DNA of 64,000 nt, from positions 66,092,001-66,156,000 of the forward strand of contig NC_091287.1 in NCBI RefSeq assembly GCF_032444005.1, given 5' to 3'. Shown in pieces: positions 14,401-62,989 of this stretch; position 1 is the first letter of the stretch, and each line of letters begins with the position of its first letter. A program made the translations under genes and the position numbers. The notes below the pieces were generated by a model, which did no database searches, had not been told where the DNA came from, and was given only the letters and a program-made list of their open reading frames with translations. The DNA comes from Ranitomeya imitator (Eukaryota).

Positions 14401-17400
14401 CCGTAATGCTGACATAATCGCCGTAGCCGAACAGACCAGGCAGGGCAGCTGGACCCCGGGAGAGGGTGAGGAAAAAACAAAAATGAAAAATTCACCAACT
14501 AGTGAAGATGTTACAGGAAGAGATATCTGAACGGGGGCAACTTCTAATGAATTATTATCATTTCAGTTTCAGGAAATTTCCCGGTCGATAATGAACACTA
14601 AATGCATGATGCAAGTATGTACAAACCTGGGGAATAAATGTTTGTCCTGGTGGAAATTGCTGCCTTGGTGGAGCAAAGGGTCTAATGTTGCCTGAAGGTT
14701 GGTTAAATGGAGGCATTCCCAATGGATTTGGAGCTGGTATGTTGATACGAACAGGACGCTCTCTAGAAAACCCTGGGGAGTTAAACCCTGGCTGAGGTCC
14801 AGGCTGAGGAAAGTTTGGTTGAAGACCAGATCCTGGTTGGTTAAATACTGCCTGTGGTCCAGGGTTTATCTGGTTGAAACCAGGCTGGTTAAGACCTGGT
14901 GGATTAAATGGTGGTTGAGCTCCAGTCTGATTAAATCCCGGCTGGTTGAAATTTGGCTGATTAAACCCTGGCTGGTTACCTGGAGGGTTAAACACAGGCT
15001 GAGGGCCAGGTGGATTAAATCCGGACTGAGGGCCTGGTGGATTAAAGCCGGACTGTGGACCAGGTTGGTTAAAGCCTGGCTGGTTGAAGCCTCCTTGAGG
15101 CCCAGGTGGGTTGAATCCTGGCTGTGAACCTGGCCCAGGTGGATTAAAGTTAGACTGGGGCTGACTGAATCGGGGTGGAGGGTTAAAACCCTGTCCAGGT
15201 GGATTGAATGGTGGAACATTTTGGTTAGGAACAGGGTGATTGGGATTCATAAGGGGTGGAGGAGGAACAGGAGGAGGATTTCTCTGATTGAACAAATGAT
15301 GGTTGGGAAACCGTGGCTCTGTGGGGAAACAAAAGGAGAGTTGTAAGTACAACAGAAATGTGAAAATCATGAGAAAAAAAGTTACATTCACATACAGAAA
15401 AGTTGGTCAAACCTGCCAATCATGGCAGGACTGGACAACGTTCTCAAGTGTATGGAGGTCTACTAAATATCCCCTGGCAGATATCAGGTGAAAGGAACCT
15501 ACTCTTTATGCCCAGGGGCTGTACTGACCCCTGACGAAGCCGACGCGAAACGCGCGTTGGGACTGTACTGTGTGATCGCGCTACATCTGCCACATGGGTA
15601 AGGAGTCGTACCTAGGAATTAAGCTTATATTTGAGGTAACTGGGCTATGAGAGACTTGAGATGTATAGACAAAGGAGATGTTGACTCTTTCCTGGGGGAA
15701 CTCTGGATCCCATGATATTCATTGTTATGCGCGGAGCACGTCATTTTAGATAGTGAGCAGGTGTTGGTGATAAAACAGGTCTGGTACCAAATGTTCCTTT
15801 GCTGAGCATGTTCAATATCTGTAGTGACTTCATGTAAGAAACAAATATATGTATATTAAATAAAATTGATTTTTACCTTTATAAAATCTGGGACTAGAAC
15901 TCCGTTTTTTCTGTATATGTGGTATCTTGTTAGTGGAGTGTCCTATGTTGACATTGTGGTCCCTATATATGGGGTTCCTCCACATGGAGATGAACTAATA
16001 TAGGAGGACTAGTGTTGTTCATTATGGGATTTAATTATCTGCTTATGATTGGTCAGCATCATACAAAGAGGAGTACACACCTTCCAGTGAACACTGTCTG
16101 AGAACAACCACTTGGACTCATTAGATGCCAATACTTTGATTGCTAATATGTAAGCAAAAGAAAAAAAACAATTTTCTATTATTGTGATATTAGCAATCAA
16201 ATATATATTGATTACACAGTGTTACATACTACATGGGCAGTGTTATGTACTACGTGGGCTGTGTTATATACTACGTGGGCTGTGCTATATACTGCGTGGC
16301 TGGGCAATATACTGCGTGGGCTGTGCTATATACTACTATACATATTCTAGAATACCCGTTAGAATCGGCCTACCATCTAGTGAGTGGCATGTACAGTAGA
16401 GTAGGACCCATGAGGGGGAGATCACCTTGCCGTGGTTGATGGGCACACATGAATTGGCCAATTTATGCGCTAAGAATCTCCATTTTAACTAAGTTTTATG
16501 AAAAAAAAATTATTGAAAAATTTTTTATGAAAAAATATTTTTGTGAAATGTATATTTGTCTGTGTTTTCACAAGGCCGATTCATGTACATGTGCTGCTGT
16601 GGTCTTTTTTATCTATCTATAGATAGATATAGATATATAGATATATAAAATTGTGAGCCTTCGCGGGCAGGGTCCTCTCTCCTCCTGTACCAGTTATGAC
16701 TTGTATAGTTTAAGATTATTGTACTTGTTTTTATTATGTATAACCCTCCTTACAAGTAAAGCGCCATGGTATAAATGGCGCTATAACAATAATAATATGA
16801 ATATATACATATATATATACACACATACATATACCGTATATATCCGCTCCGTCCAAAACTATGTCGGCATATGAACGCAGGTGACTCTGCATGTGTTTGA
16901 ACCATGCGGAATCACTGAATCCTACAAATTGAACTGTGATATTTATCTTGTGGAGACAGAGCGTCTCTGCAAGATAAATTAACATGCTGCGGTCTAGAAA
17001 GACGCGTCGCATGTGCGAATACACAGGGAAGCTGAAGGTGTCCCTGCATGCATAGTGGAGATGGAATTTCATAAAATCCCATCCACTATGCTGTAACATC
17101 TGGCCGCTGCGGCTATACGCAGTGTCCAACCTGCAGCGTATACGGGCTGTGGAAACATTCCCAAAAGAAACTATACTTACTGCCCAGAATTCACCCTTTG
17201 CTCAAGCTCTGCAGATCTCACAGTCTCTGCCAGACCAGAAGAGGTGACCTACGCGACGAGGCCACTGGTTGGCTGCAAAGTCAGGTGGATAATGGTTAGG
17301 AAAGTATTTGTTCCAGTTGGGCGGAGAGGCAGAGCTGGAGCGAAGGGCGGGGTTAAGCTTTAGATCAGTGTTCCCCCAAGTTCGGTCCTCAAGAGCCACC

Positions 17401-20400
17401 AACAGGTCATGTTTTCAGTATTTCTTTAGTATTGCAGAGGTGATAATTGCATCACCTGCACAGGCAATAATTCCATCACCTGTGCAATACTAAGGAAATC
17501 CTGAAAGCATGAATTGTTGGTGGCTCTTGAGGACCGGAGTTGGGGAACACTGCTTTAGATGGTAGAACACTTGGCCAAGATATAAATATTTTAATATTCT
17601 CACAAATTATATATTGAAGCACATTCTTGAATAATCTAAGAAGAAAGAAAATAATTTCTGAAATGGTTGACCTCCAATGAAGAACGGTTCTCGTTCAGGC
17701 TGTGGTGGTGGCGGTGGTGGAGGGGGTGGATTTCTCCATGGTTCCTGCAGCCTTGGCGGCTGATTGAAGTTGCCCGGCACAGGATTTGACGCAGGCTGAA
17801 AGTCCTGCATGCCCTTTTGAAACAAATAATAGCATTCATAAGGCTACAAGAACGTGCAGATGAAACAAGTAAAAAACTTGAAGTTAACAAAAAAAAATAC
17901 TTCTGGAACAAAAACATAAAAAGCAACTTCGGTCCAAGTCATCAACAAACGGCTAATTTAATAGAAAAAAAGTCTTAAGAAATCGACAAATTCCTCATTA
18001 AAGAAGGCTTTTGGCTTCATAATATGCCAACCATCCCACCACCTCAATAATAGGAGATAAGGTAGCCCTAATCCTTTTATAGAATTACATTCTATTTTTC
18101 TGGCTCTTTTATCCCCTTAAATATCCGTCTAGTTAAGAAATTAACATTCTCTCGCACACAATCACGACACAAATTATACTTTACATTTCCACATCTCTTG
18201 TTAATTACATGATGCTATCTGCAGTAATCTATTCAAGGCCTGCAGATAACTTGGCCTACCGGTGAAAAGAATGGAAACTTAGCATAAATTGCTTCGCACA
18301 CAGTTAATCTTAAAGAGAAAACCAGAAAAAAAAAGGAAATCTAACAGCTATTATGAGACTTATCAGCTTTACGGGAAGGGTCACTTCTACTTTCATAGGA
18401 CTAATTAAATGTGTTAAAGTCTTTGTAACTTAATGAATCTTTCAATAAATGACTTCCAACGTCTACAACATGTTTTCATTTATTAATTTTGCTCCGTATG
18501 CCGGTGTCCTATTAGAATTCTAATGATGGTTAAACAGGGTCAGACAGACAATTGAGAACGGGGCTTAGAGATTAATGACCAATATAGCCGGCTATGCAAA
18601 TTCAATTCTGTATTCCGAGAATTAAACACTTTTTAAAAGTATTTGCTCTTTAACTTTGTGTTAGCGATCCGTCTTCTGAGGGCCCTTATGGGATCTATTA
18701 GTGGGAAAAGCAAATGAGAACATAGGAATGGCATCTTCAATAGAAAATAGTACTGTGTGCTGACCTTGAAGGGACGGCCTCCTACCAATATTATAGCATA
18801 CCCTCTTTTTAACATTTTAGAACTTACAAGGGTTTGTCCATCACTGAAAGTGTCTACAGGATGGGGGATGATTCTGGTTCGGACCCCCACCGATCCTGAG
18901 AACAGAATGGAGCATGGTTTGGTCACGTGCGCTACCAATCTATTCTCTCTCTATGGCAGTGATCCCCAAGCGTTCTTACTTCGAGGGCCACATTTAGCTC
19001 CGAGAGACGGTTGTGAGACAAAGTCAAAGCCCCCAAATAGTGACATCCAGATCATGCCTCCCCCACAGTACTGACACACAGAACCCCCGATACCGGTATA
19101 ATAACAGCCAAAGGTCTCCTACACAAAACACAGCAAGGAAGTATATTTGCATTTATGGGTTTCCACCTTACCCCTCCTTTAGTATTCTCGAATTAATCAC
19201 CAACTTTATCGTCCTATGTCCAGCTGAGCACTTAGTTTATCTCTCCACACCTAAAGAAAGTATGAGCGCATACAAATCTGCTCTTATATGAGGGGCTACT
19301 TACAAAAGTCACCGTCTGGAGACCTTTTCTTAATAGCTGCTGGGTAAACTTATTGCTAATGCACCAAACTGGCAGAAAGCTGCGAGCCACATGTGCTCCC
19401 GAGGCACAGGTCGGAGATCCCAGCTTTATGGAACCGCTGGAAAAGCTGAACTCTGCCATCTTCGATATTCTAATAGAGAATGAATAGACCACTGGTGCCT
19501 ATCCACTGTTCTGATCCAATGAGACAAATAAGAAGCCCATTCTTGGGACTGGAGGGGGTCCCAGTAATCAGAAAGTTATTAATTATACACATTAGAAGAA
19601 TGTGGGTCAAACCTGCAAATTTCATTTATTTAGATGTCTATTTTGACTCTCACCCAAAAGCCAATCTCAAGGGGTGGGGGGGGGGGGGGGGGGGGAAGGG
19701 TCAGGCACGATGAGGTCTGCCATGGAGAACATATGTATGAGCGGTGGAGGGTGCATGTGTACGTGGGGCAGGAGGAGAAGCTGCTTGAATAAGAGCAATT
19801 TAAAGTGTAAGACTAACTTTAGGCTTGAAACAAATCATTTTTTATGACCCACAGTCATTTAGTTTTAGAGCAAGAGTATACAATTTATCTTAAAACTAAT
19901 CTACATTTAAAGGATATGGACATCTCTGGGGGCAATTATTATTCTTCTGCTAAGTGCATTAATTTTGGGCTAAAAATTTTTGCTGTTGGATTTCATTAAA
20001 AAAAAAAAAGAAGTAGCATAGTTTGCCTTCTATTTAGCCTGTGTGGCAATATTATTGGCTGCAGAATGCGTTAAATGGTGTATTCTCAAGTTATTATATT
20101 GCTTTAATCAGTTAAACAAGCATGAAAATGAGCAAGTTTGCAATGGACTTGCTTTTACGATCGGCTTAAAGGTAACCGGATTAGAAGTGTTTCTGCGCTC
20201 TCTGGAATGTTAAGTTATAGTAGATAACATTGCAGGTTTATTGTCAACGTGTTTCAGAGTCCACCGACTCCTTCCTCAGGACAACCATACAAAATAGGCT
20301 ATATACAAAAACTCGTCTCAGAACGGTTACCTTTATTCATGTTCTATGGAAGCTGCTGCATCTGGTCTTCAGGCTCTTTAAGTGTTATGTCTCACACAAC

Positions 20401-23400
20401 CTTACAAGGGGAGCGGTTTTAACTTTATTCATCAAACTTTTCACCTGGATAAGACCCTATTGCACTCTTGCATTTCTTTAGTTTTACCATCTGCTGTCAT
20501 TTCTCCTGCAAGTAGAGCTTTTATCTCTCAGTGTACAGCTGGTTTCCATGGAGCTTACCAACCAAGTGTGCACAGCCGTTATATTCCAGGAGTTAACCCC
20601 TAACATACCAGTTGGCTCTTTCCAGCCAATTAATTTCTATACAGCAGTTAGCTTCTCACCTCTCTCCTACTTCCAAACAAGCCACTGTGAAATCTTGCAA
20701 TATTATCAGCCGGCAGCACTGGCTTCTACCAGAGAAGTTCCCCTAATCACAGCTCAAACTGACTCAACCTTTGTGCTTGCTCAAATGCCCTGTTATCTTT
20801 AAAAGGGGTATTCCCATCTCCAAGGTCCTATCCCGATATGTAGTAGGTGTAATAATAATATTAGAAAATATCTCCAATTCGAAATCTAGTATAGTTTTTC
20901 TGATTAGCTATACCTTTTTCCTCATGTGCAGGCACTGCAGAACCATAGGCATCCATGGTTATGACCACTGATATAGTGACAGCTAGTTGCTAGTGGAAGT
21001 AACCATGGGTATTTAAAGGTCCTGCAATGCCTGCACATGAGGAAAGACAGCAAATCAGACAAACTAGGCTACATTTCTAACTAGAGATATTTGCAAATAT
21101 TATTACACCTATTACATATTGGGATAGGATCTTGGAGATGGAAATGCCTCTAAGTGTTAGTATAGAGATAGAAGTAGACTCCAGAACAAACTACTAACAT
21201 TCCTGATCCTTCACCCCACAAACACTTGAAATAGTAAGTCCGATGGAAATTACTGTATTTTCTGGCGTATAAGGGTACCGTCACACAGTGGCACTTTTGT
21301 CGCTACGACGGTACAATTCGTGACGTTCCAGCGATATCCATACGATATCGCTGTGTCTGACACGCAGCAGCGATCAGGGATCCTGCTGAGAATCGTACGT
21401 CGTAGCAGATCGTTTGGAACATTCTTTCGTCGCTGGATCTCCCGCTGTCATCGCTGGATCGGTGTGACACCGATCCAGCGATGCGTTCGCTTGTAACCAG
21501 GGTAAACATCAGGTTACTAAGCGCAGGGCCGCACTTAGTAACCCGATGTTTATCCTGGTTACCATCGTAAATGTAAAAAAAAAAAAAACACTACATACTT
21601 ACATTCCGGTGTCCGTCAGGTCCCTTGCCGTCTGCTTCCCGCACTCACTGACTGCCGGCCGTAAAGTGAAAGCAGAGCACAGCGCGCTGTGCTGTGCTTT
21701 CACTTTACGGCCGGCAGTCAGTCAGTGCGGGAAGCAGACGGCAAGGGACAGACACCGGAATGTAAGTATGTAGTGTTTGTTTTTTTTTTTGGTTTTTTTT
21801 TTTTTTTTAACGCTGGTAACCAGGGTAAACATCGGGTTACTAAGCGCGGCCCTGCGCTTAGTAACCCGATGTTTACCCTGGTTACCCGGGGACCTCGGCA
21901 TCGTTGGTCGCTGGAGAGCTGTCTGTGTGACAGCTCTCCAGCGACCACACAACGACTTACCAACGATCACGGCCAGGTCGTATCGCTGGTCGTGATCGTT
22001 GGTAAATCGTATAGTGTAACGGTACCCTCAGACTACTTTTTAACCCCTGAAAACTCTCTCAAAAGTCGGGTATCGTCTTATACGCCAGGTGTCGTCTTAT
22101 AGGGCAGGTGCGGAGTAATCTGCGGTCGCCGCATATTGTGGGGGGAGCGACCCCAATGACGAGGTGAGGGGGCACCTCACCGGGAAGGTGTAATTGAAGC
22201 AGAGGCAGAGAAGGAGATAATAGGATACAAGGGAGAGCCAGATTAGTTAAAGAGGAGTGTTTTTCTAGGCACAGCATCGCTCTCTCTCTCTTTTTTGCAT
22301 ACCCCTGGCATCCCAGACGCTGACAGTTTGCTTCACTGACACCTTCCTGGTGAGGCGCTCCCTCACCTCGTCATCGGGACCACTCCCCACCACTATATAC
22401 TTCGACCGCAGATTGCTCCGCACCCACCCTATAAGACGACACCCGGCATATAAGACAACCCCTGACTTTTGAGAAGATTTTATATTTTAACTGGAAAAGC
22501 TGGGGGTCGTCTTATATGCCCAGTCGTCTTATACGCCGGAAAATACGGTACTAGTTCTGTTGACATTTATCTACTGAGTATAGCCACCTTTCCACAAGGC
22601 TTACACTGTGATTACCTGGAACACAACACTGATAACATTGTGATATTCTGACTCTTCCTACAGATCTCATTAGGACATTAATCAATGCCTTAGAAAGCAT
22701 TTTTAGTGGAAAAGTGGCAGACACTCTTCTGTATTAAAGGTTTCCAAACCAGAAGCATAAAATAGCATGGTGAATGCAGCCTTATTCAGATGAGCCAACG
22801 GCTGAGGGGAATTCATTGATATGATTAAATGTGATGGTATGATAATGTATGGTAATTGTAATTAATCAGAGGCCCACCAGCAAGTGGAGGATGTGCAGCA
22901 TTATGTAAGCTGCATCCCGCCTGTACCAGCCTGAGCAGATCTGACAGCTGGACCCTTCTCTTGCTGCATCTGCTCAGCAGCACTTACACATCGGATGTGA
23001 CAAAATGCCCACTGCTACTCCTCCACTTCAGCAGCCATTAATATTAAGATTTACTACGTGTGTGGAAACAGGAGGTGTCCAAAAAACAATACTTCATGTG
23101 GAATCCAATAGACAGAACGAGCGGTATGTGATGTCCTTTATGACTGTGGACATAGCCAGGCTGGGACAGCATCATTTCCATGAAATGCCATGTAATCTTT
23201 GAGCAGGAAAGGTCAGCCCCTGCCACCTGATACCATGGCCCCTGTACAGTCCGTGGCAAGCCAGGGACACGGCAACTTCTGTATCCCAGAGGAAACAAGC
23301 TTACAGGACCAAAAGGAGCCCACAGGAATGAGACATAAGGTACCGTCACACTAGACGATATCGCTAGCGATCCGTGACGTTGCAGCGTCCTGGCTAGCGA

Positions 23401-26400
23401 TATCGTCCAGTGTGACAGGCAGCAGCGATCAGGCCCCTGCTGTGATATCGCTGGTCGGGGAAGAAAGTCCAGAACTTTGTTTCGTCGCTGGATCTCCCGC
23501 TGACATCGCTGAATCGGCGTGTGTGACGCCGATTCAGCGATGTCTTCGCTGGTAACCAGGGTAAACATCGGGTTACTAAGCGCAGGGCCGCTCTTAGTAA
23601 CCTGATGTTTACCCTGGTTACCATCGTTAAAGTAAAAAAAACAACCACTACATACTTACCTACCGCTGTCTGTCCCCAGCGCTCTGCTTCTCTGCACTCC
23701 TCCTGCACTGGCTGTGAGCACAGCGGCCGGAAAGCAGAGCGGTGACGTCACTGCTCTGCTTTCCGGCTGACCGGCGCTCACAGCCAGAGCAGAGAAGCAC
23801 AGCGCCGGGGACAGACAGCGGTAGGTAAGTATGTAGTGTTTGTTTTTTTTACTTTAACGATGGTAACCAGGGTAAACATCGGGTTACTAAGCGCGGCCCT
23901 GCACTTAGTAACCCGATGTTTACCCTGGTTACCGGCATCGTTGGTCGCTGGAGAGCGGTCTGTGTGACAGCTCTCCAGCGACGCTGCAGCGATCCGGATC
24001 GTTGTCGGTATCGCTGCAGCGTCGCTTAGTGTGACGGTACCTTAAGGTTGTCCCAACCCGCCAGTATCAGCAGGATCGGTCAACATTTTAAGAAATATAG
24101 AGGCGGCCGTACTCTTACCAACAGATGAGCTCCGGACAAAAAAGGACAGAACATCTGGAATGTCAGGGGCGGAGCTTTTATTTAGTGGTTTTATAGAGGC
24201 TTGTGGGACCTGCGCTCTCAGAGAAAATATGGACGTTCGACCGAGCCAAGTGTTCTGGGAGTCAGGAGACACCGCCATCAGCTGAACAAAAGGTTGACCG
24301 CAGTCTGATGTATACAGGGGTCTTAAGACACCAATTCATCAAAACTAGAGTTTTGTACACCAGTCTTGAAGATGGAGTTGCCCGTTAATCAATCTGTCAC
24401 CATTGTAAGAAATGTACTTTAGTCAGGAAATACAGTACTTGTGTCGTACCGTACACTTTTTTCGATAGATGAATTTAAATCAGCAGCTCTGACATCCGGC
24501 ACCCCACCACTCGGCTGTGTACAGTGCTGACATCCGGCACCCCACCCCTCAACTGTGCACAGCTCTGACATCCATAACCCCACCCCTCAGCTGTGTACAG
24601 CGCTGACATCCAGCACCCCACCCCTCAGCTGTGTACAGCGCTGACATCCAGCACCCCACCCCTCAGCTGTGTACAGCACTGACATCCGGCACCCCACCAC
24701 TAACCTGTGTGCAGCTCTGACATCCATAACCCCACCCCTCAGCTGTGTGCAGCTCTGACATCCAGCACCCCACCCCTCAGCTGTGTACAGCGCTGACATC
24801 CAGCACCCCACCCCTCAGCTGTGTACAGCGCTGACATCCAGCACCCCACCCCTCAGCTGTGTACAGCACTGACATCCGGCACCCCACCACTAACCTGTGT
24901 GCAGCTCTGACATCCGGCACCCCACCACTCGGCTGTGTACAGCTCTGACATCCGGCACCCCACCACTAACCTGTGTGCAGCTCTGACATCCGGCACCCCA
25001 CCACTCAACTGTGTACAGCTCTGACATCCAGCACCCCACCCCTCAGCTGTGTACAGCGCTGACATCCAGCACCCCACCCCTCAGCTGTGTACAGCGCTGA
25101 CATCCAGCACCCCACCCCTCAGCTGTGTACAGCGCTGACATCCAGCACCCCACCCCTCAGCTGTGTACAGCACTGACATCCGGCACCCCACCACTAACCT
25201 GTGTGCAGCGCTGACATCCGGCACCCCACCACTCGGCTGTGTACAGCTCTGACATCCAGCACCCCACCACTAACCTGTGTGCAGCTCTGACATCCGGCAC
25301 CCCACCACTAACCTGTGTGCAGCTCTGACATCCAGCACCCCACCACTCGGCTGTGTACAGCTCTGACATCCGGCACCCCACCACTAACCTGTGTGCAGCT
25401 CTGACATCCGGCACCCCACCACTAACCTGTGTACAGCTCTGACATCCGGCACCCCACCACTAACCTGTGTACAGCGCTGACATCCAGCACCCCACCACTA
25501 ACCTGTGTGCAGCTCTGACATCCAGCACTCCACCACTAACCTGTGTGCAGCTCTGACATCCGGCACCCCACCACTAACCTGTGTGCAGCTCTGACATCCG
25601 GCACCCCACCACTAACCTGTGTGCAGCTCTGACATCCGGCACCCCACCACTAACCTGTGTACAGCGCTGACATCCAGCACCCCACCACTCGGCTGTGTAC
25701 AGCTCTGACATCCGGCACCCCACCACTAACCTGTGTGCAGCTCTGACATCCGGCACCCCACCACTAACCTGTGTGCAGCTCTGACATCCGGCACCCCACC
25801 ACTAACCTGTGTGCAGCTCTGACATCCGGCACCCCACCACTCGGCTGTGTACAGCTCTGACATCCGGCACCCCACCACTAACCTGTGTGCAGCTCTGACA
25901 TCCGGCACCCCACCACTCAACTGTGTACAGCTCTGACATCCAGCACCCCACCCCTCAGCTGTGTACAGCGCTGACATCCAGCACCCCACCCCTCAGCTGT
26001 GTACAGCGCTGACATCCAGCACCCCACCCCTCAGCTGTGTACAGCGCTGACATCCAGCACCCCACCCCTCAGCTGTGTACAGCACTGACATCCGGCACCC
26101 CACCACTAACCTGTGTGCAGCGCTGACATCCGGCACCCCACCACTCGGCTGTGTACAGCTCTGACATCCAGCACCCCACCACTAACCTGTGTGCAGCTCT
26201 GACATCCGGCACCCCACCACTAACCTGTGTGCAGCTCTGACATCCGGCACCCCACCACTAACCTGTGTGCAGCTCTGACATCCAGCACCCCACCACTCGG
26301 CTGTGTACAGCTCTGACATCCGGCACCCCACCACTAACCTGTGTGCAGCTCTGACATCCGGCACCCCACCACTAACCTGTGTACAGCTCTGACATCCGGC

Positions 26401-29400
26401 ACCCCACCACTAACCTGTGTACAGCGCTGACATCCAGCACCCCACCACTAACCTGTGTACAGCTCTGACATCCAGCACTCCACCACTAACCTGTGTGCAG
26501 CTCTGACATCCGGCACCCCACCACTAACCTGTGTGCAGCTCTGACATCCGGCACCCCACCACTAACCTGTGTACAGCGCTGACATCCAGCACCCCACCAC
26601 TCGGCTGTGTACAGCTCTGACATCCGGCACCCCACCACTAACCTGTGTGCAGCTCTGACATCCGGCACCCCACCACTAACCTGTGTGCAGCTCTGACATC
26701 CGGCACCCCACCACTAACCTGTGTGCAGCTCTGACATCCGGCACCCCACCACTAACCTGTGTGCAGCTCTGACATCCGGCACCCCACCACTAACCTGTGT
26801 GCAGCTCTGACATCCGGCACCCCACCACTAACCTGTGTGCAGCTCTGACATCCGGCACCCCACCACTAACCTGTGTACAGCTCTGACATCCGGCACCCCA
26901 CCACTAACCTGTGTGCAGCTCTGACATCCGGCACCCCACCACTAACCTGTGTGCAGCTCTGACATCCAGCACCCCACCACTCGGCTGTGTACAGCTCTGA
27001 CATCCGGCACCCCACCACTAACCTGTGTGCAGCTCTGACATCCGGCACCCCACCACTCGGCTGTGTACAGCTCTGACATCCGGCACCCCACCACTAACCT
27101 GTGTGCAGCTCTGACATCCAGCACCCCACCACTCGGCTGTGTACAGCTCTGACATCTGGCACCCCACCACTAACCTGTGTGCAGCTCTGACATCCGGCAC
27201 CCCACCACTAACCTGTGTGCAGCTCTGACATCCGGCACCCCACCACTCAGCTGTGTGCAGCTCTGACATCCAGCACCCCACCACTAACCTGTGTGCAGCT
27301 CTGACATCCGGCACCCCACCACTAACCTGTGTGCAGCTCTGACATCCGGCACCCCACCACTCAGCTGTGTGCAGCTCTGACATCCAGCACCCCACCACTA
27401 ACCTGTGTACAGCTCTGACATCCAGCACCCCACCACTAACCTGTGTGCAGCTCTGACATCCGGCACCCCACCACTAACCTGTGTACAGCTCTGACATCCG
27501 GCACCCCACCACTAACCTGTGTGCAGCGCTGACATCCGGCACCCCACCACTCAGCTGTGTACAGCTCTGACATCCGGCACCCCACCACTAACCTGTGTAC
27601 AGCTCTGACATCCGGCACCCCACCACTAACTAACCTGTGTGCAGCTCTGACATCCGGCACCCCACCACTAACCTGTGTGCAGCGCTGACATCCGGCACCC
27701 CACCACTAACCTGTGTGCAGCGCTGACATCCGGCACCCCACCACTAACCTGTGTGCAGCTCTGACATCCGGCACCCCACCACTAACCTGTGTGCAGCTCT
27801 GACATCCGGCACCCCACCACTCAGCTGTGTACAGCTCTGACATCCAGCACCCCACCACTAACCTGTGTACAGCTCTGACATCCGGCACCCCACCACTAAC
27901 CTGTGTACAGCTCTGACATCCGGCACCCCACCACTAACCTGTGTGCAGCTCTGACATCCAGCACCCCACCACTCGGCTGTGTACAGCGCTGACATCCGGC
28001 ACCCCACCACTAACCTGTGTGCAGCTCTGACATCCGGCACCCCACCACTCAGCTGTGTGCAGCTCTGACATCCGGCACCCCACCACTCAGCTGTGTGCAG
28101 CTCTTTCATCCGGCACCCCACCACTCAGCTGTGTGCAGCTCTGACATCCGGCACCCCACCACTAACCTGTGTGCAGCTCTGACATCCGGCACCCCACCAC
28201 TAACCTGTGTACAGCTCTGACATCCGGCACCCCACCACTAACCTGTGTGCAGCTCTGACATCCGGCACCCCACCACTAACCTGTGTGCAGCTCTGACATC
28301 CAGCACCCCACCACTAACCTGTGTGCAGCTCTGACATCCGGCACCCCACCACTAACCTGTGTGCAGCTCTGACATCTGGCACCCCACCACTCAGCTGTGT
28401 GCAGCGCTGATATCCAGCACCCCACGACTTGGCTATGTGCAGCGCTGACATCCGGCACCCCACCACTCAGCTGTGTGTAGGATCCAAAGTTACCACTTGT
28501 ACACAATGTAGTCAGAAAAGCACAGCACCATATACTGTATATGGCCGGTCTCTGGTATTGCCACTCAGCATCTATTGAAGTGAATGGGAGCTGAGCTGCT
28601 GTGCCCAGGAATAGCTACTAGACAGTGTTCAGAGCTATGCTGTCCGGCTCCATATACATCCGACCACAGTCACAGTAGCTTGGTGAGTGTCTGGGAGTCA
28701 GAGCTCTGCACTAATCTAATATTGATAAGCTATAGAGAGGTAATCAATATAAGTCATGGACATACAGAATCTATGACTAGGGGAAATCAGAATTAACAGA
28801 CTTCAGGCTACTTGCCTAGTAGAAAACCGATATAACCGTTTGTAAACTGAAGCTGGCAATGATGTGAGCGCTCCCCACTGGCAGGTTTTGCTAAGGAAAA
28901 TTGAATGCTGACTACACACTGGCACTTTAGTTAGTATGCGATGTTTGCCCAAGGAAAAATGGTAATAATTCTGCCACTTTTACAGAAAATGTCGTATTTC
29001 CAAATGTGTCCATTACTGCCTGCTCTAGCACGTTACTCGTTTTAGAAGGCAGAAAAGCAAAGCAGCTTTGCCATTATCATTAGAAATCAGTCCAAGTTCA
29101 ACCTAGAAAGTCTCCAATGAATCGCTGAGGTCACCAAACGGCAGCAAATTATTCAGCACAAGCTGCCACATTTCACACATGATGAAGCCATTACATTATG
29201 CCAACAGGTAGGCACATTACTGCGGGCAGCAGGTATTGTTCCTTTGAAACTCAATTTTATCACATTACTGTAAATGAGCAAATTATATTTCCTAAGAAAG
29301 ATGAAATGCAAAACCACAAACAGATGTAAAAAATATAACAATTATACAAAGAGGAACATAGAGCAGGCACGGTCAAATATGAGGACGTGACAGGTACTCA

Positions 29401-32400
29401 CAGGAAACCTTGGTGGCCCCATTGGCAGACGAGGCTGGTTTGGGACAGGCAGAAGGGGAACTGTGGTGGGGAAAAAAATAATAAAAATCACCAATTTAAT
29501 TTTCAGTCTAATGGTCACTGGACGCTCACATTTTCTATGACCTAATTAAATTGGCTCTGAGGCTTAAGATAGATTGACGTTAATGAAACTGACCAGATCA
29601 TTTATTTCCTTCTTCACAAAAAGGTTAAAAAAAAAAAAAAAAAAGGAGGCAGCGACGGCAGGCATGGAGGAGGCAGCGACGGCAGGCACGGAGGAGGCAG
29701 CGACGGCAGGCACGGAGGAGGCAGGCACGGAGGAGGCAGCGACGGCAGGCAGGGAGGAGGCAGCGACGGCAGGCACGGAGGGGGCAGCGACGGCAGGCAC
29801 GGAGGGGGCAGCGACGGCAGGCACGGAGGGGGCAGCGACGGCAGGCACGGAGGGGGCAGCGACGGCAGGCACGGAGGAGGCAGCGACGGAAGGCACGGAG
29901 GAGGCAGCGACGGCAGGCACGGAGGAGGCAGCGACGGCAGGCCCGGAGGAGGCAGCGACGGCAGGCCCGGAGCAGGCAGCGACTGCAGGCACGGAGCAGG
30001 CAGCGACTGCAGGCACGGAGCAGGCAGCGACTGCAGGCACGGAGCAGGCAGCGACTGCAGGCACGGAGCAGGCAGCGACTGCAGGCACGGAGCAGGCAGC
30101 GACCGCAGGCACGGAGCAGGCAGCGACTGCAGGCACGGAGCAGGCAGCGACCGCAGGCACGGAGGAGGCAGCGACTGCAGGCATAGAGGAAGCAGTGACC
30201 GCAGGCATGGAGGAGGCACAAAGCCCGGACTGTAGACGCCCACTAGGTCACTCTATGCCAGATAGCAATCAGAGTGGATATATTATTGAAGGATTTTCCA
30301 AAGTATGTAGGGCAGCTAAGCTCATGTTAAGTGGTGAGGAGGGCTAAATGGTGGTGGCCATGGTATATTAAAGAAAAAATAAAACAACAACCTGGTGACA
30401 GGTGCCATTTAATAAAAGAAAATAATGAAAAACTCGCTAGTCCCCATTTCATCAGAGATGCTGAGTGTCTGACTCCACCAATCTAACATTCATGATGATC
30501 CCATAGGAATAAAAAGGTGAAAGGATATCAGGCACTGAGCAAGTGGACAAAATCTACAAGTTTATTTCAAGAACATAAATGTAGACAGGATAGCTCAGTC
30601 AGCAAAACTAAATGGTTGTGACCAGAGGGTCCTAATCATGGGAGGGTCTTAAATCATGGCTACTATGATTAAGACCCTCTGGTTGAAACGCGTGGATTTT
30701 GCTGCCTGAGCTGTTCTGTCTACAGTTAGGTTCCTGAAATAAACTTGGCGATTCTTGTCCACTTATGGAGTGCTACATAGCCTTTCACCGTTAATGTCTA
30801 CGAGGCTCATGGGCCCGTGCACCTGTATGAGGAAAGCACTGCAAGACTGGGGAGCTGGAATCGCTGCTCCCTACGATCTCAGAGGAATGGTTAGCAATTA
30901 CAAGAACAAAAAGACTAAACTGGAAACCTCTTTGGGGGCTACTGAAATTCTTTTCTAGACAACTTAGAGTTCAGCATTAGCACCCACCTGCACCCTCTCC
31001 TGCACAGCATGCCATTTATTTTCTCCGACATGGGAGTTATAAGCTATGTATCCACTAGAGGGCGCTTACTTGTACCATCTATGTGCTGCACTGACCTCTA
31101 CGATCAGTGCCAGAAAAGAGGACGGAGCTGCCGTCCAATGATCAGACTAATGGACTGCTGTAACTTGCTGACCCAAAGGAACGCAGACAAGTAAACATTG
31201 TTTTCCCAATAGTTGCGGTTTGCGCAGAACGGGGCCATGGACGCAGGTTGTGCCACCTCGCTCTAAATAGATATTGCTCTGACAACATGTAAAGTGCCCT
31301 CATAAATAGACCTTACAAATTTTCCATTAATGGGAGACATTTTAATTTTACCAAAAACTAAATTTTTGTATTTTATATGAACATAGTGACAATGCACATG
31401 CTCCAACCTATCCAGAACATAAGAGGCAATAGCATACAGCCAAAAGTAATCCGTACCTTGGACTGGGGCCACATTTCCCTTAAAATGTGGATTAATATGA
31501 ATATTTTTAGGCTGTTGGGGTGGTGTTGCCAAGAGAGAATTACTTCCCATCCTGGATTTTTCCAGGGGTGACTGCAGCCGTTCGGACGATTGATTCCTAG
31601 ATCGTGGCATTGGCAGAAGAGGCTGTATAGGCTGATGATGCTGGAACAGACTGCGGATCGGCTGCTGGGGGAAGCAGAACAGGAAAGTGAGCGGATGATC
31701 ACAAACACATTGACAAATGGACTTTTTTTGTTTTGTTTTTTACTTTAACCAACATTTTTTTCTGCAGGACAAGTTTTAGTTTTGACCATACAAATGCCAG
31801 GGGTGGTGAAAGTGAAAAAAATGCAATTCCACCATTGTTCTTTGAGTTTTGTTTTTATGAGATTCATTATATAGTACAAATGGCCTGTTAACAATTCTTC
31901 AGAGCAAAACGAATACGCCAATACCAGACTTGTAGGTTTTTCCTTTAATTTAAATTAGCCCCTTAAAGGGAACCTGTCACCCCCTCAGGCATTTGTAACT
32001 AAAAGAGCCACCTTGTGCAGCACTAATGCTGCATTCTGACAAGGTGGCTCTTTTAGTTATGCTCCCTGCACACGCTGAAATAAAAGCTTATAAAATGCGC
32101 CCCCTCATACCGTGAAATCGTCCCGGGAGCGCATTGTCCCCCCCTAATCAGACGCAGCACAGCCCTTACTCCAGGCCTGTGCGCGCCGGGCGCCGCCTCC
32201 TCTTGCTTCATTAGCGTTCCCGGCGCCATGCGCAGTTGCGCTGCCCTTCGTACTTACAGCGCAGGCGCCAGGGACGATAATGAAGCAAGAGGAGGCGGCG
32301 CCCGGCGCACACAGGCCTGGAGTGACGGCTGTGCTGCGTCTGATTAGGAAGGAAAGACCCGCCCTGGGACGATTTCACGGTATGAGGGGGCACATTTTAT

Positions 32401-38400: not shown

Positions 38401-41400
38401 TAGTATTTTCCCCATCACCAGTGACAGCACCGCCTGAGAGATTTACAGAGCATTAAATCCACCTTAGGGAGGGACCACCACCTGTAGAACCCTTCTCCCA
38501 AAGTATAAATCAGTGTTGGGGGAATAAATCAAGCTTTGTGCTTATAGCATATAGGAGGAGAGGACCACGTTGCTGCCTTACATATCTGGTCGATAAACAC
38601 ATTTCACTCTATCTACTCAAGAGACTGCCATGGCCCGCGTCGAGTGAGCCTTCAGATTCCCTGGAGATAATCTTTATTATCATCTATAATAATCTTTATT
38701 TTTTATATAGCGCTAACATATTCCGCAGCGCTTTACAGTTTGCACACATTATCATCACTGTCTCCGTTGGGGCTCACAATCTAAATTCCCTATCAGTATG
38801 TCTTTGGAATGTGGGAGGAAATCGGAGTACCCGGAGGAAACCCACGCAAACACGGAGAGAACATACAAACTCTTTGCAGATCTTGTCCTTGGTGGGGTTT
38901 GAACCCGGGACTCCAGCGCTGCAAGGCTGCTGTGCTATCCACTGCGCCACCGTGCTGCCCGAGATGCCCCATCACTTGAGAAAGAGACTAAATTAATGGC
39001 CTACCTGAACCACCACCTAGCTAAGGTACTTCTTGAAGCTCAAATCCCTTTCCTAGAACCCTGGAAGGAGACAAATAACGGACTCTTCCTCCATGGCCCT
39101 GTGGCTCAAACATATTTTAAACAGACTTCTTCTACCTTCCAAGATGTGCAATTTTTCTTCCTTATAATTCTTGGGGTTAGTACACAAGGAAGGGAGGATG
39201 ACCACCTGACTTCTATGGAACCTAGTGGCAACTTTGGAAAGGTAAGCTGGGTCTGACTTTAAGGTAACCCTGTCATACAGGATTTGTATAAAGGGAATGC
39301 CAAGAGACAAGGCTTGAATGTCACCAACTCTTCTAGCAGATGTTAGGGTGACTAGAAGGACTGTTTTCAACATAAGGTTCTTGACTGATGCAGGACATAT
39401 CGGTTCAAAAGGGGAGTGCGTCAGTGCTTCTAGCACCAGGTTCAAATCCCAAGTTGGAAGTTTTGGAGTAACCACTGGTTTTGATCTGTCACATGATTTT
39501 ATGAATCCCTTTATCCACATACAGTGGGGCAAAAAAGTATTTAGTCAGTCAGCAATAGTGCAAGTTCCACCACTTAAAAAGATGAGAGGCGTCTGTAATT
39601 CACATCATAGGTAGACCTCAACTATGGGAGACAAACTGAGAAAAAAAAATCCAGAAAATCACATTGTCTGTTTTTTTAACATTTTATTTGCATATTATGG
39701 TGGAAAATAAGTATTTGGTCAGAAACAAAATTTCATCTCAATACTTTGTAATATATCCTTTGTTGGCAATGACAGAGGTCAAACGTTTTCTATAAGTCTT
39801 CACAAGGTTGCCACACACTGTTGTTGGTATGTTGGCCCATTCCTCCATGCAGATCTCCTCTAGAGCAGTGATGTTTTTGGCTTTTCGCTTGGCAACACGG
39901 ACTTTCAACTCCCTCCAAAGGTTTTCTATAGGGCTAAGATCTGGAGACTGGCTAGGCCACTCCAGGACCTTGAAACGCTTCTTACGAAGCCACTCCTTCG
40001 TTGCCCTGGCGGTGTGCTTTGGATCATTGTCATGTTGAAAGACCCAGCCACGTTTCATCTTCAATGCCCTTGCTGATGGAAGGAGGTTTGCACTCAAAAT
40101 CTCACGATACATGGCCCCATTCATTCTTTCATGTACCCGGATCAGTCGTCCTGGCCCCTTTGCAGAGAAACAGCCCCAAAGCATGATGTTTCCACCACCA
40201 TGCTTTACAGTAGGTATGGTGTTTGATGGATGCAACTCAGTATTCTTTTTCCTCCAAACACGACAAGTTGTGTTTCTACCAAACAGTTCCAGTTTGGTTT
40301 CATCAGACCATAGGACATTCTCCCAAAACTCCTCTGGATCATCCAAATGCTCTCTAGCAAACTTCAGATGGGCCTGGACATGTACTGGCTTAAGCAGTGG
40401 GACACGTCTGGCACTGCAGGATCTGAGTCCATGGTGGCGTAGTGTGTTACTTATGGTAGGCCTTGTTACATTGGTCCCAGCTCTCTGCAGTTCATTCACT
40501 AGGTCCCCCCGCGTGGTTCTGGGATTTTTGCTCACCGTTCTTGTGATCATTCTGACCCCACGGGGTGGGATTTTGCGTGGAGCCCCAGATCGAGGGAGAT
40601 TATCAGTGGTCTTGTATGTCTTCCATTTTCTAATTATTGCTCCCACTGTTGATTTCTTCACTCCAAGCTGGTTGGCTATTGCAGATTCAGTCTTCCCAGC
40701 CTGGTGCAGGGCTACAATTTTGTTTCTGGTGTCCTTTGACAGCTCTTTGGTCTTCACTATAGTGGAGTTTGGAGTCAGACTGTTTGAGGGTGTGCACAGG
40801 TGTCTTTTTATACTGATAACAAGTTTAAACAGGTGCCATTACTACAGGTAATGAGTGGAGGAAAGAGGAGACTCTTAAAGAAGAAGTTACAGGTCTGTGA
40901 GAGCCAGAAATCTTGATTGTTTGTTTCCGACCAAATACTTATTTTCCACCATAATATGCAAATAAAATGTTAAAAAAAACAGACAATGTGATTTTCTGGA
41001 TTTTTTTTTCTCAGTTTGTCTCCCATAGTTGAGGTCTACTTATGATGTAAATTACAGACGCCTCTCATCTTTTTAAGTGGTGGAACTTGCACTATTGCTG
41101 ACTGACTAAATACTTTTTTGCCCCACTGTATTACTTGCTAGGTCATAATTATGTAGAGCCCCCAAGGCAGATATCTGTACTTTGAGGCTCCTAATAGAGA
41201 ACCCCCTATTTAGTCCTTTCTAGGGAAATTCTATGATGGGTTCAATTAGAAATACAGACTTGTAGTTTTACACCTGAGCTGCTAAGGAACTTTTTCCATG
41301 TTCTACCGTAGATGTTAGTTGTTAATGGTTTTCTACTTTTTAGAAATGTGAAAATCCTATCATCTGAGAACCCTTACTACGCTAATCGTGACCTCTCAAA

Positions 41401-61559: not shown

Positions 61560-62989
61560 TTCGAAAATACGTGCGGTAAGGGACGGGGAAGTAGAAGTAC
61601 TGATAATGGTGCAAGAAGACGCCAAGATGCGACAACACCTGTTGCTGTAGTGTACAAGCACGCCCATCCACGACACACAGGTTCCTGTCCCATTTTGCAG
61701 GGAGGCATGGTAGACCACTTCTGAAGCCAGGGCAGGGCGAACAGGTGGTGAAATGGAGAGCGGATAAGGCTTCCAGCAAGCTTGGCAGCACCACGCAGTC
61801 TTCCACACAGTCCAGTCTCACCAGCCAACAGTCTGGATCACATAATCGTCACCATGATGCTCATTCCGCCTACCACATTGAGTCCCAGGTTCTCACAATA
61901 GGACACTCCGAGGAGCTGTCTACAACATTTCTTGATTGTGGCCTCTCAACCAGCATGCTCCCAGAGTGACAGGAGGACATGCTGTTTAGTGATGCAGTCA
62001 CGGCCACAAAAAATGATGATGGGGAACAGCAAAATTTTTTTTGAGGAAGATGATGAGACACAGTTGTTGATAAGTCAGGTGGTTGTTAAGTTACCAAGTC
62101 AGGAGGACCAGGGTGCGGTGGTGGATGACAAAGTCAACTACCCAACCTGGGAATCTGACATGCAGAACGGAGGCCAGCAGCGCCAAGGGGGAGAAATCGG
62201 CCACGGGGCAGTGGGGTGACCAGAGGGAGAAGGCAGGCAACTGCTCCGTAGAGCACCAAACCTTCCTGAATTTAGGAGTTCCCCAGTCTGGGACGTTTTA
62301 AAGAGAGTTCTGAGAGAGAAAAAAAAAAAAAGGTCATCTGTAACCTGTGCCATGCCAAGATCAGCAGGGCCTGACCATTAAGAGCCTAACCACCACCAGC
62401 ATGATCAGGGCACAGAGTCAGGTGCTTAGATAACATGTGCCTGAACGCCTGGGTCCACGATCAGTGCCAGCGGGTGACCTCACTGCCTCTTAACCTGTGC
62501 TAGGTACTTCCCAATACCCTGTCCATGACAGTGGCGCAGATGCCTTCTGCCCTGCACATATCCTAGCACTTTCTGACGCACCATCATCAGGGACTTCCAA
62601 ATCTTTGTCCCAGCACAGTGTTCAGCTGTCCCTACCCCAGGCCTTGGAATGAAAGAAGGCGTTTGCAGCCAACTACCCACAGGCCCAAAGGCTAAACAGA
62701 CATTTCCATGTTGCTTGCCGTGGAAACGTTGCCGTTTAGGCTTGTTAACATGGAGAATTTCTGCTGACTAATGGCCCCAGCCATTCCTCGGTACCAAGAT
62801 GCCACTTTTTCTCCAAATGTGGCGTCCCCTCCTTTTACCAACATGTGTCCAGGAATATCATCGATGCCCTTATCAGCGCAGTTACTGGGATAGTCCACTT
62901 AACGACCAACAAGAGGACAAGCGTTTGCAGTCAGAGACGCTACCTTTCACACTGGGTGAACATTGTAGAGGATGGAGTGGAATCCCACC
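61560..62989 (+). pseudogene. hAT (BED-finger) transposase remnant, interrupted by an LTR
   Basis: SSPVW (62277-91), VICNLCHAKISR (62333-68) and SLTTTSMIR form a BED zinc finger; LPFRLV and VHLTT (62893-907) motifs follow; many frameshifts. Confidence 0.75.

What the first reader, a model, noticed from the sequence alone, without database searches (positions are those of the whole stretch)
20240..20285. Hammerhead ribozyme motif inside the RBM33 pre-mRNA (sense strand, intronic)
Seen: on the minus strand, which is the transcribed strand, the intron between exons 29402-29460 and 17672-17813 reads UUGUC CUGAGGA A GGAGUC ggug GACUCU GAAA C ac GUU^GACAA. The catalytic core positions are canonical, stem II is 6 bp, stem I closes across the cleavage site (predicted between 20246 and 20245), and AATAAA follows immediately. 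Established: Penelope-like retroelements and newt satellite 2 carry minimal type-I hammerheads whose short palindromic stem III needs dimerisation. Inference: this copy could cut RBM33 pre-mRNA co-transcriptionally. However, its 2-nt loop III and imperfect palindrome (AACACGUU versus AACGCGUU) predict weak monomer activity.
Basis: partly seen in the sequence, partly recalled or inferred. Interest (0 to 1): 0.72.

Follow-up and report, generated by a model that had tools for sequence, protein, structure and literature searches.

The report
Lone Penelope-type hammerhead relic, RBM33 intron
A short RNA motif shaped like the self-cutting "hammerhead" carried by Penelope-type jumping genes does sit, in the sense direction, inside an intron of a poison frog's RBM33 gene, but it is a single, slightly off-consensus copy of a kind already known to litter frog genomes and most likely does nothing.

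Summary
All core letters are canonical. Helix I has 5 bp and helix II has 6 bp.

RBM33 identity, strand and intron are confirmed. Three minus-strand exons align in order to residues 411-712 of Engystomops RBM33.

A motif this good is expected by chance about 1.6e-4 times per 64-kb window, or about 15 per 6 Gb. Its build matches the published minimal hammerhead of Penelope-like elements (PLEs): long helix II, short helix I, and an unpaired base between A9 and 10.1. It misses two family hallmarks. It has G10.1-U11.1 where G-C is expected, and a non-palindromic ACACGU helix III.

No Rfam hammerhead model scores it. There is no second copy, no tandem partner on the same strand, and no RT or GIY-YIG remnant nearby. 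Published single minimal hammerheads show no detectable cleavage.

Verdict: a solitary retroelement-derived hammerhead relic, probably inert. This is a known kind of low interest. The scan has already noted many PLE hammerheads elsewhere in this genome.

The parts
20240..20285 (-). Whole minimal type I hammerhead-shaped motif (helix I, core, helix II, GAAA, vestigial helix III, cut site)
   Evidence: Sequence read. It is the only strict descriptor hit in the window. Chance rate is 1.6e-4 per window.
20273..20279 (-). Core box C3-U4-G5-A6-G7-G8-A9 (CUGAGGA)
   Evidence: pattern hit.
20272..20272 (-). Unpaired A between A9 and G10.1, a hallmark of PLE minimal hammerheads
   Evidence: The feature is described in PMC4209133.
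20256..20271 (-). Helix II: 6 bp (GGAGUC/GACUCU) with GGUG loop. The innermost pair, G10.1-U11.1, is a wobble.
   Evidence: The helix forms in the MFE and centroid folds of the 55-nt, 173-nt and 251-nt contexts.
20247..20255 (-). G12-A13-A14, then A15.1-C-A-C-G-U16.1: a vestigial, non-palindromic helix III
   Evidence: Forcing the A15.1-U16.1 pair costs about 7 kcal/mol in the nearest-neighbour model.
20245..20246 (-). Predicted cut site, after U17 (20246) and before G1.1 (20245)
   Evidence: Follows from the core numbering applied. No RNA-end data could be obtained.
20237..20242 (-). AATAAA in the sense direction, overlapping the 3' arm of helix I
   Evidence: It is one of 6 sense AATAAA in the 11.6-kb intron, so it is unremarkable on its own.
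20324..20335 (-). Upstream arm of a perfect 12-nt inverted repeat that brackets the motif
   Evidence: This 12-mer occurs only at these two places in the window.
20167..20178 (-). Downstream arm of the same inverted repeat, 67 nt past the cut site
   Evidence: The 173-nt unit closed by these arms folds at -47.4 kcal/mol, z = -3.1, but its limits were chosen after seeing the repeat.
17672..17813 (-). RBM33 exon downstream of the intron (aligns to Engystomops RBM33 residues 430-475)
29402..29460 (-). RBM33 exon upstream of the intron (aligns to residues 411-429)

Best explanation
This is a solitary genomic copy of the minimal type I hammerhead motif that Penelope-like retroelements (PLEs) carry near the junction of their flanking repeat and ORF. 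A retroelement-derived insertion left it, in the sense direction, in the 11.6-kb RBM33 intron. It is transcribed passively as part of the pre-mRNA and removed with the intron. It is not expected to cut at a meaningful rate, for three reasons. Its helix III is a single A-U pair, so the class needs a second copy to build a double hammerhead, and no partner exists on this strand. Its helix III letters are not self-complementary. Its G10.1-C11.1 pair is a wobble. Shown: the motif, its position and strand, its rarity by chance, and the absence of a partner, tandem copy or coding remnant. Inferred: the retroelement origin (from architecture and from the known abundance of such motifs in frogs) and the inertness (from published assays on related motifs and from energy estimates).
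For: - The motif and coordinates are verified.
- It is the only strict descriptor hit in the window. Chance expectation is 1.6e-4 per window.
- Published counts give about 9,000 minimal hammerheads in Xenopus tropicalis, roughly 0.4 per 64 kb, mostly as single motifs from truncated PLEs (PMC4209133).
- Architecture matches the published PLE family traits: helix II of 6-8 bp, helix I of 4-5 bp, an unpaired base between 9 and 10.1, and G at 10.1.
- The scan's earlier notes report abundant PLE hammerheads in this same genome. These are leads only.
- Sense, intronic placement is confirmed.
- No same-strand partner exists.
- The double-hammerhead energy is unfavourable, and the intermolecular helix III pair probability is about 1e-5.
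- Single minimal hammerheads were inactive in vitro, and dimers were only weakly active.
- The Anolis PLE hammerhead is protein-assisted and leaves no RNA-seq ends at its cut site.
Against: - No homologous copy of the flanks could be found. Membership of a repeat family is therefore not demonstrated.
- No RT or GIY-YIG remnant lies within 4 kb upstream.
- Two of the four published non-descriptor hallmarks are missed: G10.1-C11.1, and a palindromic 15.2-16.2 with loop 3.
- No Rfam hammerhead model gives any score.
- The 169-nt stretch around the motif keeps 6 CpG (observed/expected 0.9, against 0.54 for the window). It does not look old and decayed, so the two deviations may be family traits and not private damage.
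- Inertness is inferred, not measured.
Confidence: 0.75

Rival explanations
1. The motif belongs to a small non-autonomous element of about 169 nt (20167-20335), not to a truncated PLE. The element is bounded by a perfect 12-nt inverted repeat with TA at both outer ends. It could be MITE-like, or a retrozyme-like or SINE-like derivative that carries a PLE-type hammerhead.
For: - The perfect 12-nt inverted repeat brackets the motif and occurs nowhere else in the window. My rough chance estimate is about 0.02 for an 800-nt region.
- The bounded unit folds 3 standard deviations better than shuffles, with further imperfect pairing inside the arms.
- The hammerhead helices I and II persist inside that fold.
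- No coding remnant is adjacent.
- The downstream arm lies about 70-80 nt past the cut site. That is near where PLE copies are expected to end in the Anolis element (reverse transcription starts 85-92 nt past the cut).
Against: - The unit limits were chosen after seeing the repeat, so the z-score is inflated.
- One inverted repeat at p of about 0.02 is weak.
- There is no second copy in 64 kb.
- Retrozymes are tandem, and their hammerheads have a 4-bp helix II with loop-loop contacts, unlike this motif.
Confidence: 0.12
2. Chance match: an ordinary intronic sequence that happens to satisfy the hammerhead descriptor.
For: - About 15 motifs of this quality, and about 290 at the lax threshold, are expected by chance in a 6-Gb genome. 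The scan reads very many windows.
- No Rfam hit.
- No homologous copy found.
- The 55-nt fold is unremarkable (z = -1.3).
Against: - Retroelement-derived minimal hammerheads are at least 100 times more frequent per window in frogs than chance matches of this quality (0.4 against 1.6e-4).
- Features not required by my descriptor also match the family: the unpaired base at 9/10.1, G at 10.1, a helix III one transition away from a palindrome, and AATAAA directly after the motif.
Confidence: 0.07
3. Active ribozyme. The motif cleaves RBM33 pre-mRNA, either on its own, as a dimer in trans, or when helped by PLE-encoded protein. Possibly this acts together with the adjacent AATAAA to give truncated transcripts.
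For: - All catalytic core letters are intact, and helices I and II are predicted to form in every context folded.
- It is in the sense direction in the pre-mRNA.
- An Anolis PLE hammerhead cleaves when its own protein is present.
- Conserved sense intronic hammerheads are known in amniotes (cited).
Against: - There is no partner copy. Helix III is not self-complementary, and the dimer is energetically disfavoured.
- The 10.1-11.1 pair is a wobble.
- There are no loop-loop tertiary contacts, which natural hammerheads need at cellular Mg2+ (established knowledge: Khvorova 2003; De la Pena 2003).
- Single minimal hammerheads are inactive in vitro.
- Retrozyme copies are under-represented in frog introns, which suggests that costly ones are removed.
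- No RNA data could be obtained.
Confidence: 0.05

Closest known systems
Minimal hammerheads (min-HHR) of metazoan Penelope-like elements (Cervera & De la Pena 2014, PMC4209133)
   Same: - Type I topology.
- Helix II of 6 bp, in the family's long range.
- Helix I of 5 bp.
- An unpaired base between A9 and 10.1, and G at 10.1.
- A near-absent helix III.
- Occurs as a single dispersed motif, as most of the roughly 9,000 Xenopus tropicalis motifs do.
   Different: - U at 11.1 instead of C.
- Helix III and loop letters (ACACGU) are not palindromic.
- No recognisable flanking repeat or RT-EN ORF nearby.
- Family membership by sequence homology could not be tested.
Poseidon PLE hammerhead of Anolis carolinensis (PAc; PMC11167929)
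   Same: A PLE hammerhead made of helix I, helix II and loop II only, with weak intrinsic activity. A structured stem lies some 70-120 nt downstream of the cut site.
   Different: In PAc the ORF starts at helix II and continues for hundreds of codons. Here the only frame through the motif stops at the cut site (TGA at 20247-20245), and no ORF follows.
Canonical type I hammerheads of amphibian non-LTR retrozymes / newt satellite 2 (PMC7229834)
   Same: Type I topology. Helix III is reduced to 1-2 bp with a short loop. They depend on dimer formation and occur in amphibians.
   Different: Those sit in tandem repeats of 170-400 bp, have a 4-bp helix II and a 6-bp helix I, and have conserved loop 1-loop 2 contacts and a palindromic loop 3. 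This copy is not tandem and has the PLE-type build.
Conserved intronic hammerheads HH9/HH10 of amniotes (Rfam RF02275, RF02277)
   Same: Sense orientation inside an intron of a protein-coding gene.
   Different: There is no Rfam match, even at E up to 10 on 76 nt. The stable helix III and tertiary contacts are absent. Conservation could not be tested.

Membership tests
Hammerhead ribozyme (core definition, Hertel numbering) | C3-U4-G5-A6-N7-G8-A9 box | tested here: met
   CUGAGGA at 20279-20273.
Hammerhead ribozyme (core definition, Hertel numbering) | G12-A13-A14, the A15.1-U16.1 pair, and a non-G base at position 17 | tested here: met
   GAAA at 20255-20252, U16.1 at 20247, U17 at 20246.
Hammerhead ribozyme (core definition, Hertel numbering) | Three helices around the core | tested here: inconclusive
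   Helix I (5 bp) and helix II (6 bp) form in all folds. Helix III is one A-U pair on a tetraloop and is not predicted to form.
Hammerhead ribozyme (core definition, Hertel numbering) | Site-specific self-cleavage | not testable with these tools
   This needs transcription assays or RNA-end data.
Rfam hammerhead families (Hammerhead_1, _3, _II, HH9, HH10) | Score at or above the gathering threshold of a covariance model | tested here: not met
   There were 0 hits at gathering on the window. No hammerhead hit appeared at E up to 10 on 701 nt or on 76 nt.
PLE minimal hammerhead (PMC4209133) | Long helix II (6-8 bp) and short helix I (4-5 bp) | tested here: met
   6 bp and 5 bp.
PLE minimal hammerhead (PMC4209133) | [quoted passage not shown] | tested here: met
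   A at 20272.
PLE minimal hammerhead (PMC4209133) | Highly conserved G10.1-C11.1 pair | tested here: not met
   G20271 pairs with U20256, a wobble.
PLE minimal hammerhead (PMC4209133) | Palindromic 15.2-16.2 and loop 3, allowing a dimeric helix III | tested here: not met
   ACACGU gives two central mismatches in a homodimer. The double-hammerhead energy is -18.5 against -27.4 kcal/mol for two monomers.
PLE minimal hammerhead (PMC4209133) | Lies in the flanking repeat of a PLE, or belongs to a multi-copy consensus family with covariation | tested here: inconclusive
   There is no RT or GIY-YIG remnant within 4 kb and no other copy in the window. The genome-wide test was impossible. The paper notes that most motifs are solitary.
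Non-LTR retrozyme / newt satellite 2 | Tandem repeats of 170-400 bp, each with a hammerhead | tested here: not met
   No tandem or second copy.
Non-LTR retrozyme / newt satellite 2 | Canonical build: helix II of 4 bp, helix I of 6 bp, with interacting loops 1 and 2 | tested here: not met
   Helix II is 6 bp with an unpaired A, and helix I is open with no loop 1. Criteria are from PMC4209133 and PMC7229834.
Conserved host intronic ribozyme (HH9/HH10-like) | Conservation in the orthologous intron of related species | not testable with these tools

The most novel reading that the evidence does not exclude
The copy is conditionally active. Like the protein-assisted Anolis PLE hammerhead, it cleaves only when PLE-encoded protein (or another chaperone) is present. 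Bursts of Penelope activity would then cut sense-oriented relic hammerheads inside host pre-mRNAs such as RBM33. The AATAAA at the cut site would help to release a truncated transcript. The 169-nt stem-closed unit around the motif would be the RNA that the protein recognises.
Probability: 0.04. Interest if true: 0.6.

Novelty: new member of a known kind. Interest (0 to 1): 0.12.

Why it matters
As it stands it matters little. Dispersed single minimal hammerheads from Penelope-like elements are documented by the thousand in amphibian genomes, many of them in introns, and single copies have not been shown to cut. The copy is useful only as one data point. It is a sense-oriented relic tolerated in an essential gene's intron, with an intact catalytic core but a disabled helix III. 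That is the pattern expected if active sense copies are selected against. If the motif did cleave, for example with help from PLE protein, it would link transposon activity to cleavage of host pre-mRNAs. That would be of real interest, but nothing here points that way.

Tried and rejected
- **Rfam.** I searched at gathering on the whole window, and at E up to 10 on 701 nt and on 76 nt. There was no hammerhead hit. I read this as the models not covering minimal PLE motifs, not as proof against the motif.
- **Second copy in the window.** blastn with word size 9 on 19600-21000 found only unrelated MITE-like matches at 20800-20970. Local alignments to the two other hammerhead-like loci (15531+, 30621+) and between neighbouring segments were not significant, apart from a 14-nt direct repeat.
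- **Other core-pattern hits.** The hit at 40272(-) lies inside an intact Tc1/Sleeping Beauty-type transposase ORF, so it is chance. The hit at 2590(+) has no helices. The hit at 62590(-) appears only under the relaxed descriptor.
- **PLE coding remnants.** Minus-strand stop-to-stop pieces from 20286 to 24400, and the large ORFs of the window, gave no RT or GIY-YIG in Pfam.
- **ORF proxy for repeat copies.** A protein search with the spurious 83-aa ORF across the motif found nothing. This is uninformative.
- **Sequencing runs.** I obtained no copy number, no polymorphism and no RNA ends. After that I sent this stretch, by reference only, to the scan's own findings index (both blank) and to the protein search. 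I chose not to send it to any public DNA collection scan.
- **CpG-decay explanation.** I considered that U11.1 and the A in loop III are private CpG decay. The local unit is not CpG-poor, so this stays a guess.
- **Supplementary files.** The files of PMC4209133 that hold the Xenopus consensus families are not held as text.
Full report
**Observation**

Reading the minus strand confirms the motif letter for letter. In order, the parts are:
- Helix I 5' arm UUGUC (20284-20280).
- Core box CUGAGGA (20279-20273).
- One unpaired A (20272).
- Helix II GGAGUC/GACUCU (20271-20266 and 20261-20256), closed by a GGUG loop.
- GAAA (20255-20252).
- C-AC-G (20251-20248).
- U16.1 (20247) and U17 (20246), with the predicted cut before G20245.
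- Helix I 3' arm GACAA (20245-20241).
- AATAAA at 20242-20237, overlapping the end of that arm.

Three details temper the phrase "canonical":
- The innermost helix II pair is a G10.1-U11.1 wobble.
- There is an extra base between A9 and 10.1.
- A 2-nt hairpin loop cannot form. As a monomer, helix III is a lone A-U pair on a CACG tetraloop, and forcing that pair costs about 7 kcal/mol in the nearest-neighbour model.

**Is it more than chance?**

I wrote a structural descriptor with these requirements:
- the core box;
- an optional single inserted base;
- helix II of at least 4 bp;
- GAAA;
- at least one helix III pair besides A15.1-U16.1, with a 2-8 nt loop;
- U followed by a non-G base;
- helix I of at least 4 bp.

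It finds exactly one hit in the 64-kb window, and it is this one. It found none in 40 Mb of Markov-1 random sequence.

A planted-core simulation with 3 million samples gives these expectations:

| Threshold | Per 64-kb window | Per 6 Gb |
|---|---|---|
| Lax (helices I and II at least 4 bp) | 3e-3 | about 290 |
| As good as observed (I at least 5 bp, II at least 6 bp) | 1.6e-4 | about 15 |

A chance origin is therefore possible somewhere in a giant genome, but it is a poor bet for this locus. Cervera and De la Pena counted about 9,000 minimal hammerheads in Xenopus tropicalis, roughly 0.4 per 64 kb (PMC4209133). The scan's earlier notes on this same poison-frog genome report Penelope-type hammerheads again and again (leads only, not checked by me).

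**Gene context**

- The 277-aa minus-strand ORF at 15391-14561 is 86% identical to residues 473-712 of a 1,277-aa protein. NCBI names that protein RNA-binding protein 33 of Engystomops pustulosus.
- The exons at 29458-29402 and 17813-17672 align to the immediately preceding residues, 411-429 and 430-475.
- Both exons have a pyrimidine tract with AG, and a GT donor, on the minus strand.

The motif therefore lies in the sense direction in a genuine 11.6-kb RBM33 intron.

**What kind of hammerhead**

No Rfam model scores it. That holds at gathering thresholds on the window, at E up to 10 on 701 nt, and at E up to 10 on 76 nt. This agrees with the literature, where the minimal motifs of Penelope-like elements escaped canonical descriptors.

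PMC4209133 lists the traits of metazoan PLE minimal hammerheads:
- a longer than usual helix II (7-8 bp in Schistosoma, 6 bp in Drosophila virilis);
- a short helix I (4-5 bp);
- an unpaired base at the 5' end of helix II, between positions 9 and 10.1;
- a highly conserved G10.1-C11.1 pair;
- palindromic 15.2-16.2 and loop 3.

This copy meets the first three and has G at 10.1. It fails the last two: it has U11.1, and ACACGU is one transition away from a palindrome.

It does not have the build of the canonical type I ribozymes of amphibian retrozymes and newt satellite 2. Those have a 4-bp helix II, a 6-bp helix I, interacting loops, and tandem 170-400-bp units (PMC7229834). It is not tandem either.

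**Surroundings**

- Nothing within 4 kb upstream on the same strand encodes RT or GIY-YIG.
- The frame through the motif stops at the cut site, and no ORF follows. This is unlike the Anolis Poseidon element, whose ORF starts at helix II.
- No other copy of 19600-21000 exists in the window, apart from unrelated MITE-like matches beyond 20800.
Their flanks are not detectably related.
- The only other same-strand core-pattern hit, at 40272, is coding sequence of a Tc1/Sleeping Beauty-type transposase.

One unexpected feature remains. A perfect 12-nt inverted repeat (20324-20335 and 20167-20178) brackets the motif and occurs nowhere else in the window. The 173-nt unit that it closes folds at -47.4 kcal/mol, against -34.7 +/- 4.1 for shuffles (z = -3.1), and the hammerhead helices I and II are preserved inside it. 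I chose the limits after seeing the repeat, so this is suggestive only.

The repeat could mark a small non-autonomous element. It could also be the structured 3' region of a PLE copy. In the Anolis element, reverse transcription starts in a stem-loop 85-92 nt past the cut site, and here the downstream arm lies 67-78 nt past it.

**Will it cut?**

The evidence points to no.
- This class needs two copies to build an extended helix III. No partner lies on the minus strand of the intron or the window.
- A homodimer would have two central mismatches in helix III. Its double-hammerhead energy is -18.5 kcal/mol, against -27.4 for two separate monomers. The intermolecular helix III pairs have a probability of about 1e-5. 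The caveat is that nearest-neighbour models ignore core tertiary structure.
- A single Schistosoma minimal hammerhead showed no detectable cleavage. Dimers and trimers showed low cleavage, mostly at unphysiological Mg2+.
- Axolotl single motifs are also weak.
- The Anolis PLE hammerhead cleaved only with the element's protein present, and RNA-seq showed no ends at its cut site.
- From established knowledge, not tested here: hammerheads without loop-loop contacts are nearly inactive at cellular Mg2+, and changes at 10.1-11.1 lower the rate.

The AATAAA is one of six sense copies in this intron. That would make it part of the element and not a host signal. I did not verify this.

**Are the two deviations private decay?**

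Both could be CpG transitions (C11.1-G12 to U-G, and CG to CA in loop III). However, the 169-nt unit keeps 6 CpG (observed/expected 0.9, against 0.54 for the window). It does not look heavily decayed, so the deviations may equally be family traits. Only other copies can tell.

**What could not be done**

I did not send it to public DNA collections.
- Family membership by homology, the age of the insertion, conservation, expression and RNA ends all remain untested.

**Verdict**

- The best reading, at about 0.75, is a solitary retroelement-derived PLE-type minimal hammerhead relic that rides passively in the RBM33 intron.
- A variant reading, at about 0.12, is that its carrier is a small stem-closed non-autonomous element.
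- A chance match is about 0.07, and real cleavage of the pre-mRNA about 0.05.
- The kind is already described, and the scan has met it many times in this genome. Interest is low.

Noticed in passing
window 15527-15565 (+), antisense to RBM33, about 140 nt from the exon that ends at 15391: A second PLE-style hammerhead-like motif. It has CUGACGA, an unpaired A, a 2-bp helix II (GC/GC) on a CGAC loop, GAAAC, and a perfectly palindromic AACGCGCGUU. Helix I is CCC/GGG, extendable to about 10 bp with two mismatches. It appears only under the relaxed descriptor.
   Followed up: partly
It shares the 8-nt lead-in AUGGUUGU with the motif studied here, but the alignment is not significant.
   Followed up: partly
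window 20167-20178 and 20324-20335: A perfect 12-nt inverted repeat (TAAAGGTAACCG and its complement) with TA at both outer ends. It encloses a 169-nt unit that folds 3 sd better than shuffles. Its origin is unexplained.
   Followed up: partly
window 20327-20340 and 20419-20432: A 14-nt direct repeat (ATGAATAAAG-G/T-TAA on the minus strand), 92 nt apart. Only 3 of 1000 shuffles scored as high. The downstream copy overlaps the upstream arm of the inverted repeat.
   Followed up: no
window 24357-28500: A minisatellite of about 105 copies of a 38-nt, C-rich unit (GC up to 0.60, GC skew -0.4) inside the same RBM33 intron.
   Followed up: no
window 39741-40757 (-): An uninterrupted 339-aa Tc1/Sleeping Beauty-type transposase ORF (HTH_SB, HTH_Tnp_Tc3_2, DDE_3). 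It is possibly a young copy.
   Followed up: partly
window 20802-21151, 773-1102; also 21490-23940: MITE-like inverted-repeat elements. One is a roughly 350-bp palindromic unit with related copies near 773-1102. The other is a cluster of arms that are 90-95% complementary (for example 23548-23698 with 23786-23936), all in the same intron.
   Followed up: no
window 29564-30347: A tandem repeat, open in several frames on both strands (PAVAASS-like periodic units), just upstream of the RBM33 exon at 29460.
   Followed up: no
window 14771-15215 (-): The G/P-F-N-P repeat region of the RBM33 exon. The exon aligns to Engystomops RBM33 residues 473-712 at 86% identity, so most of the repeat tract is shared and not private to this frog.
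   Followed up: partly
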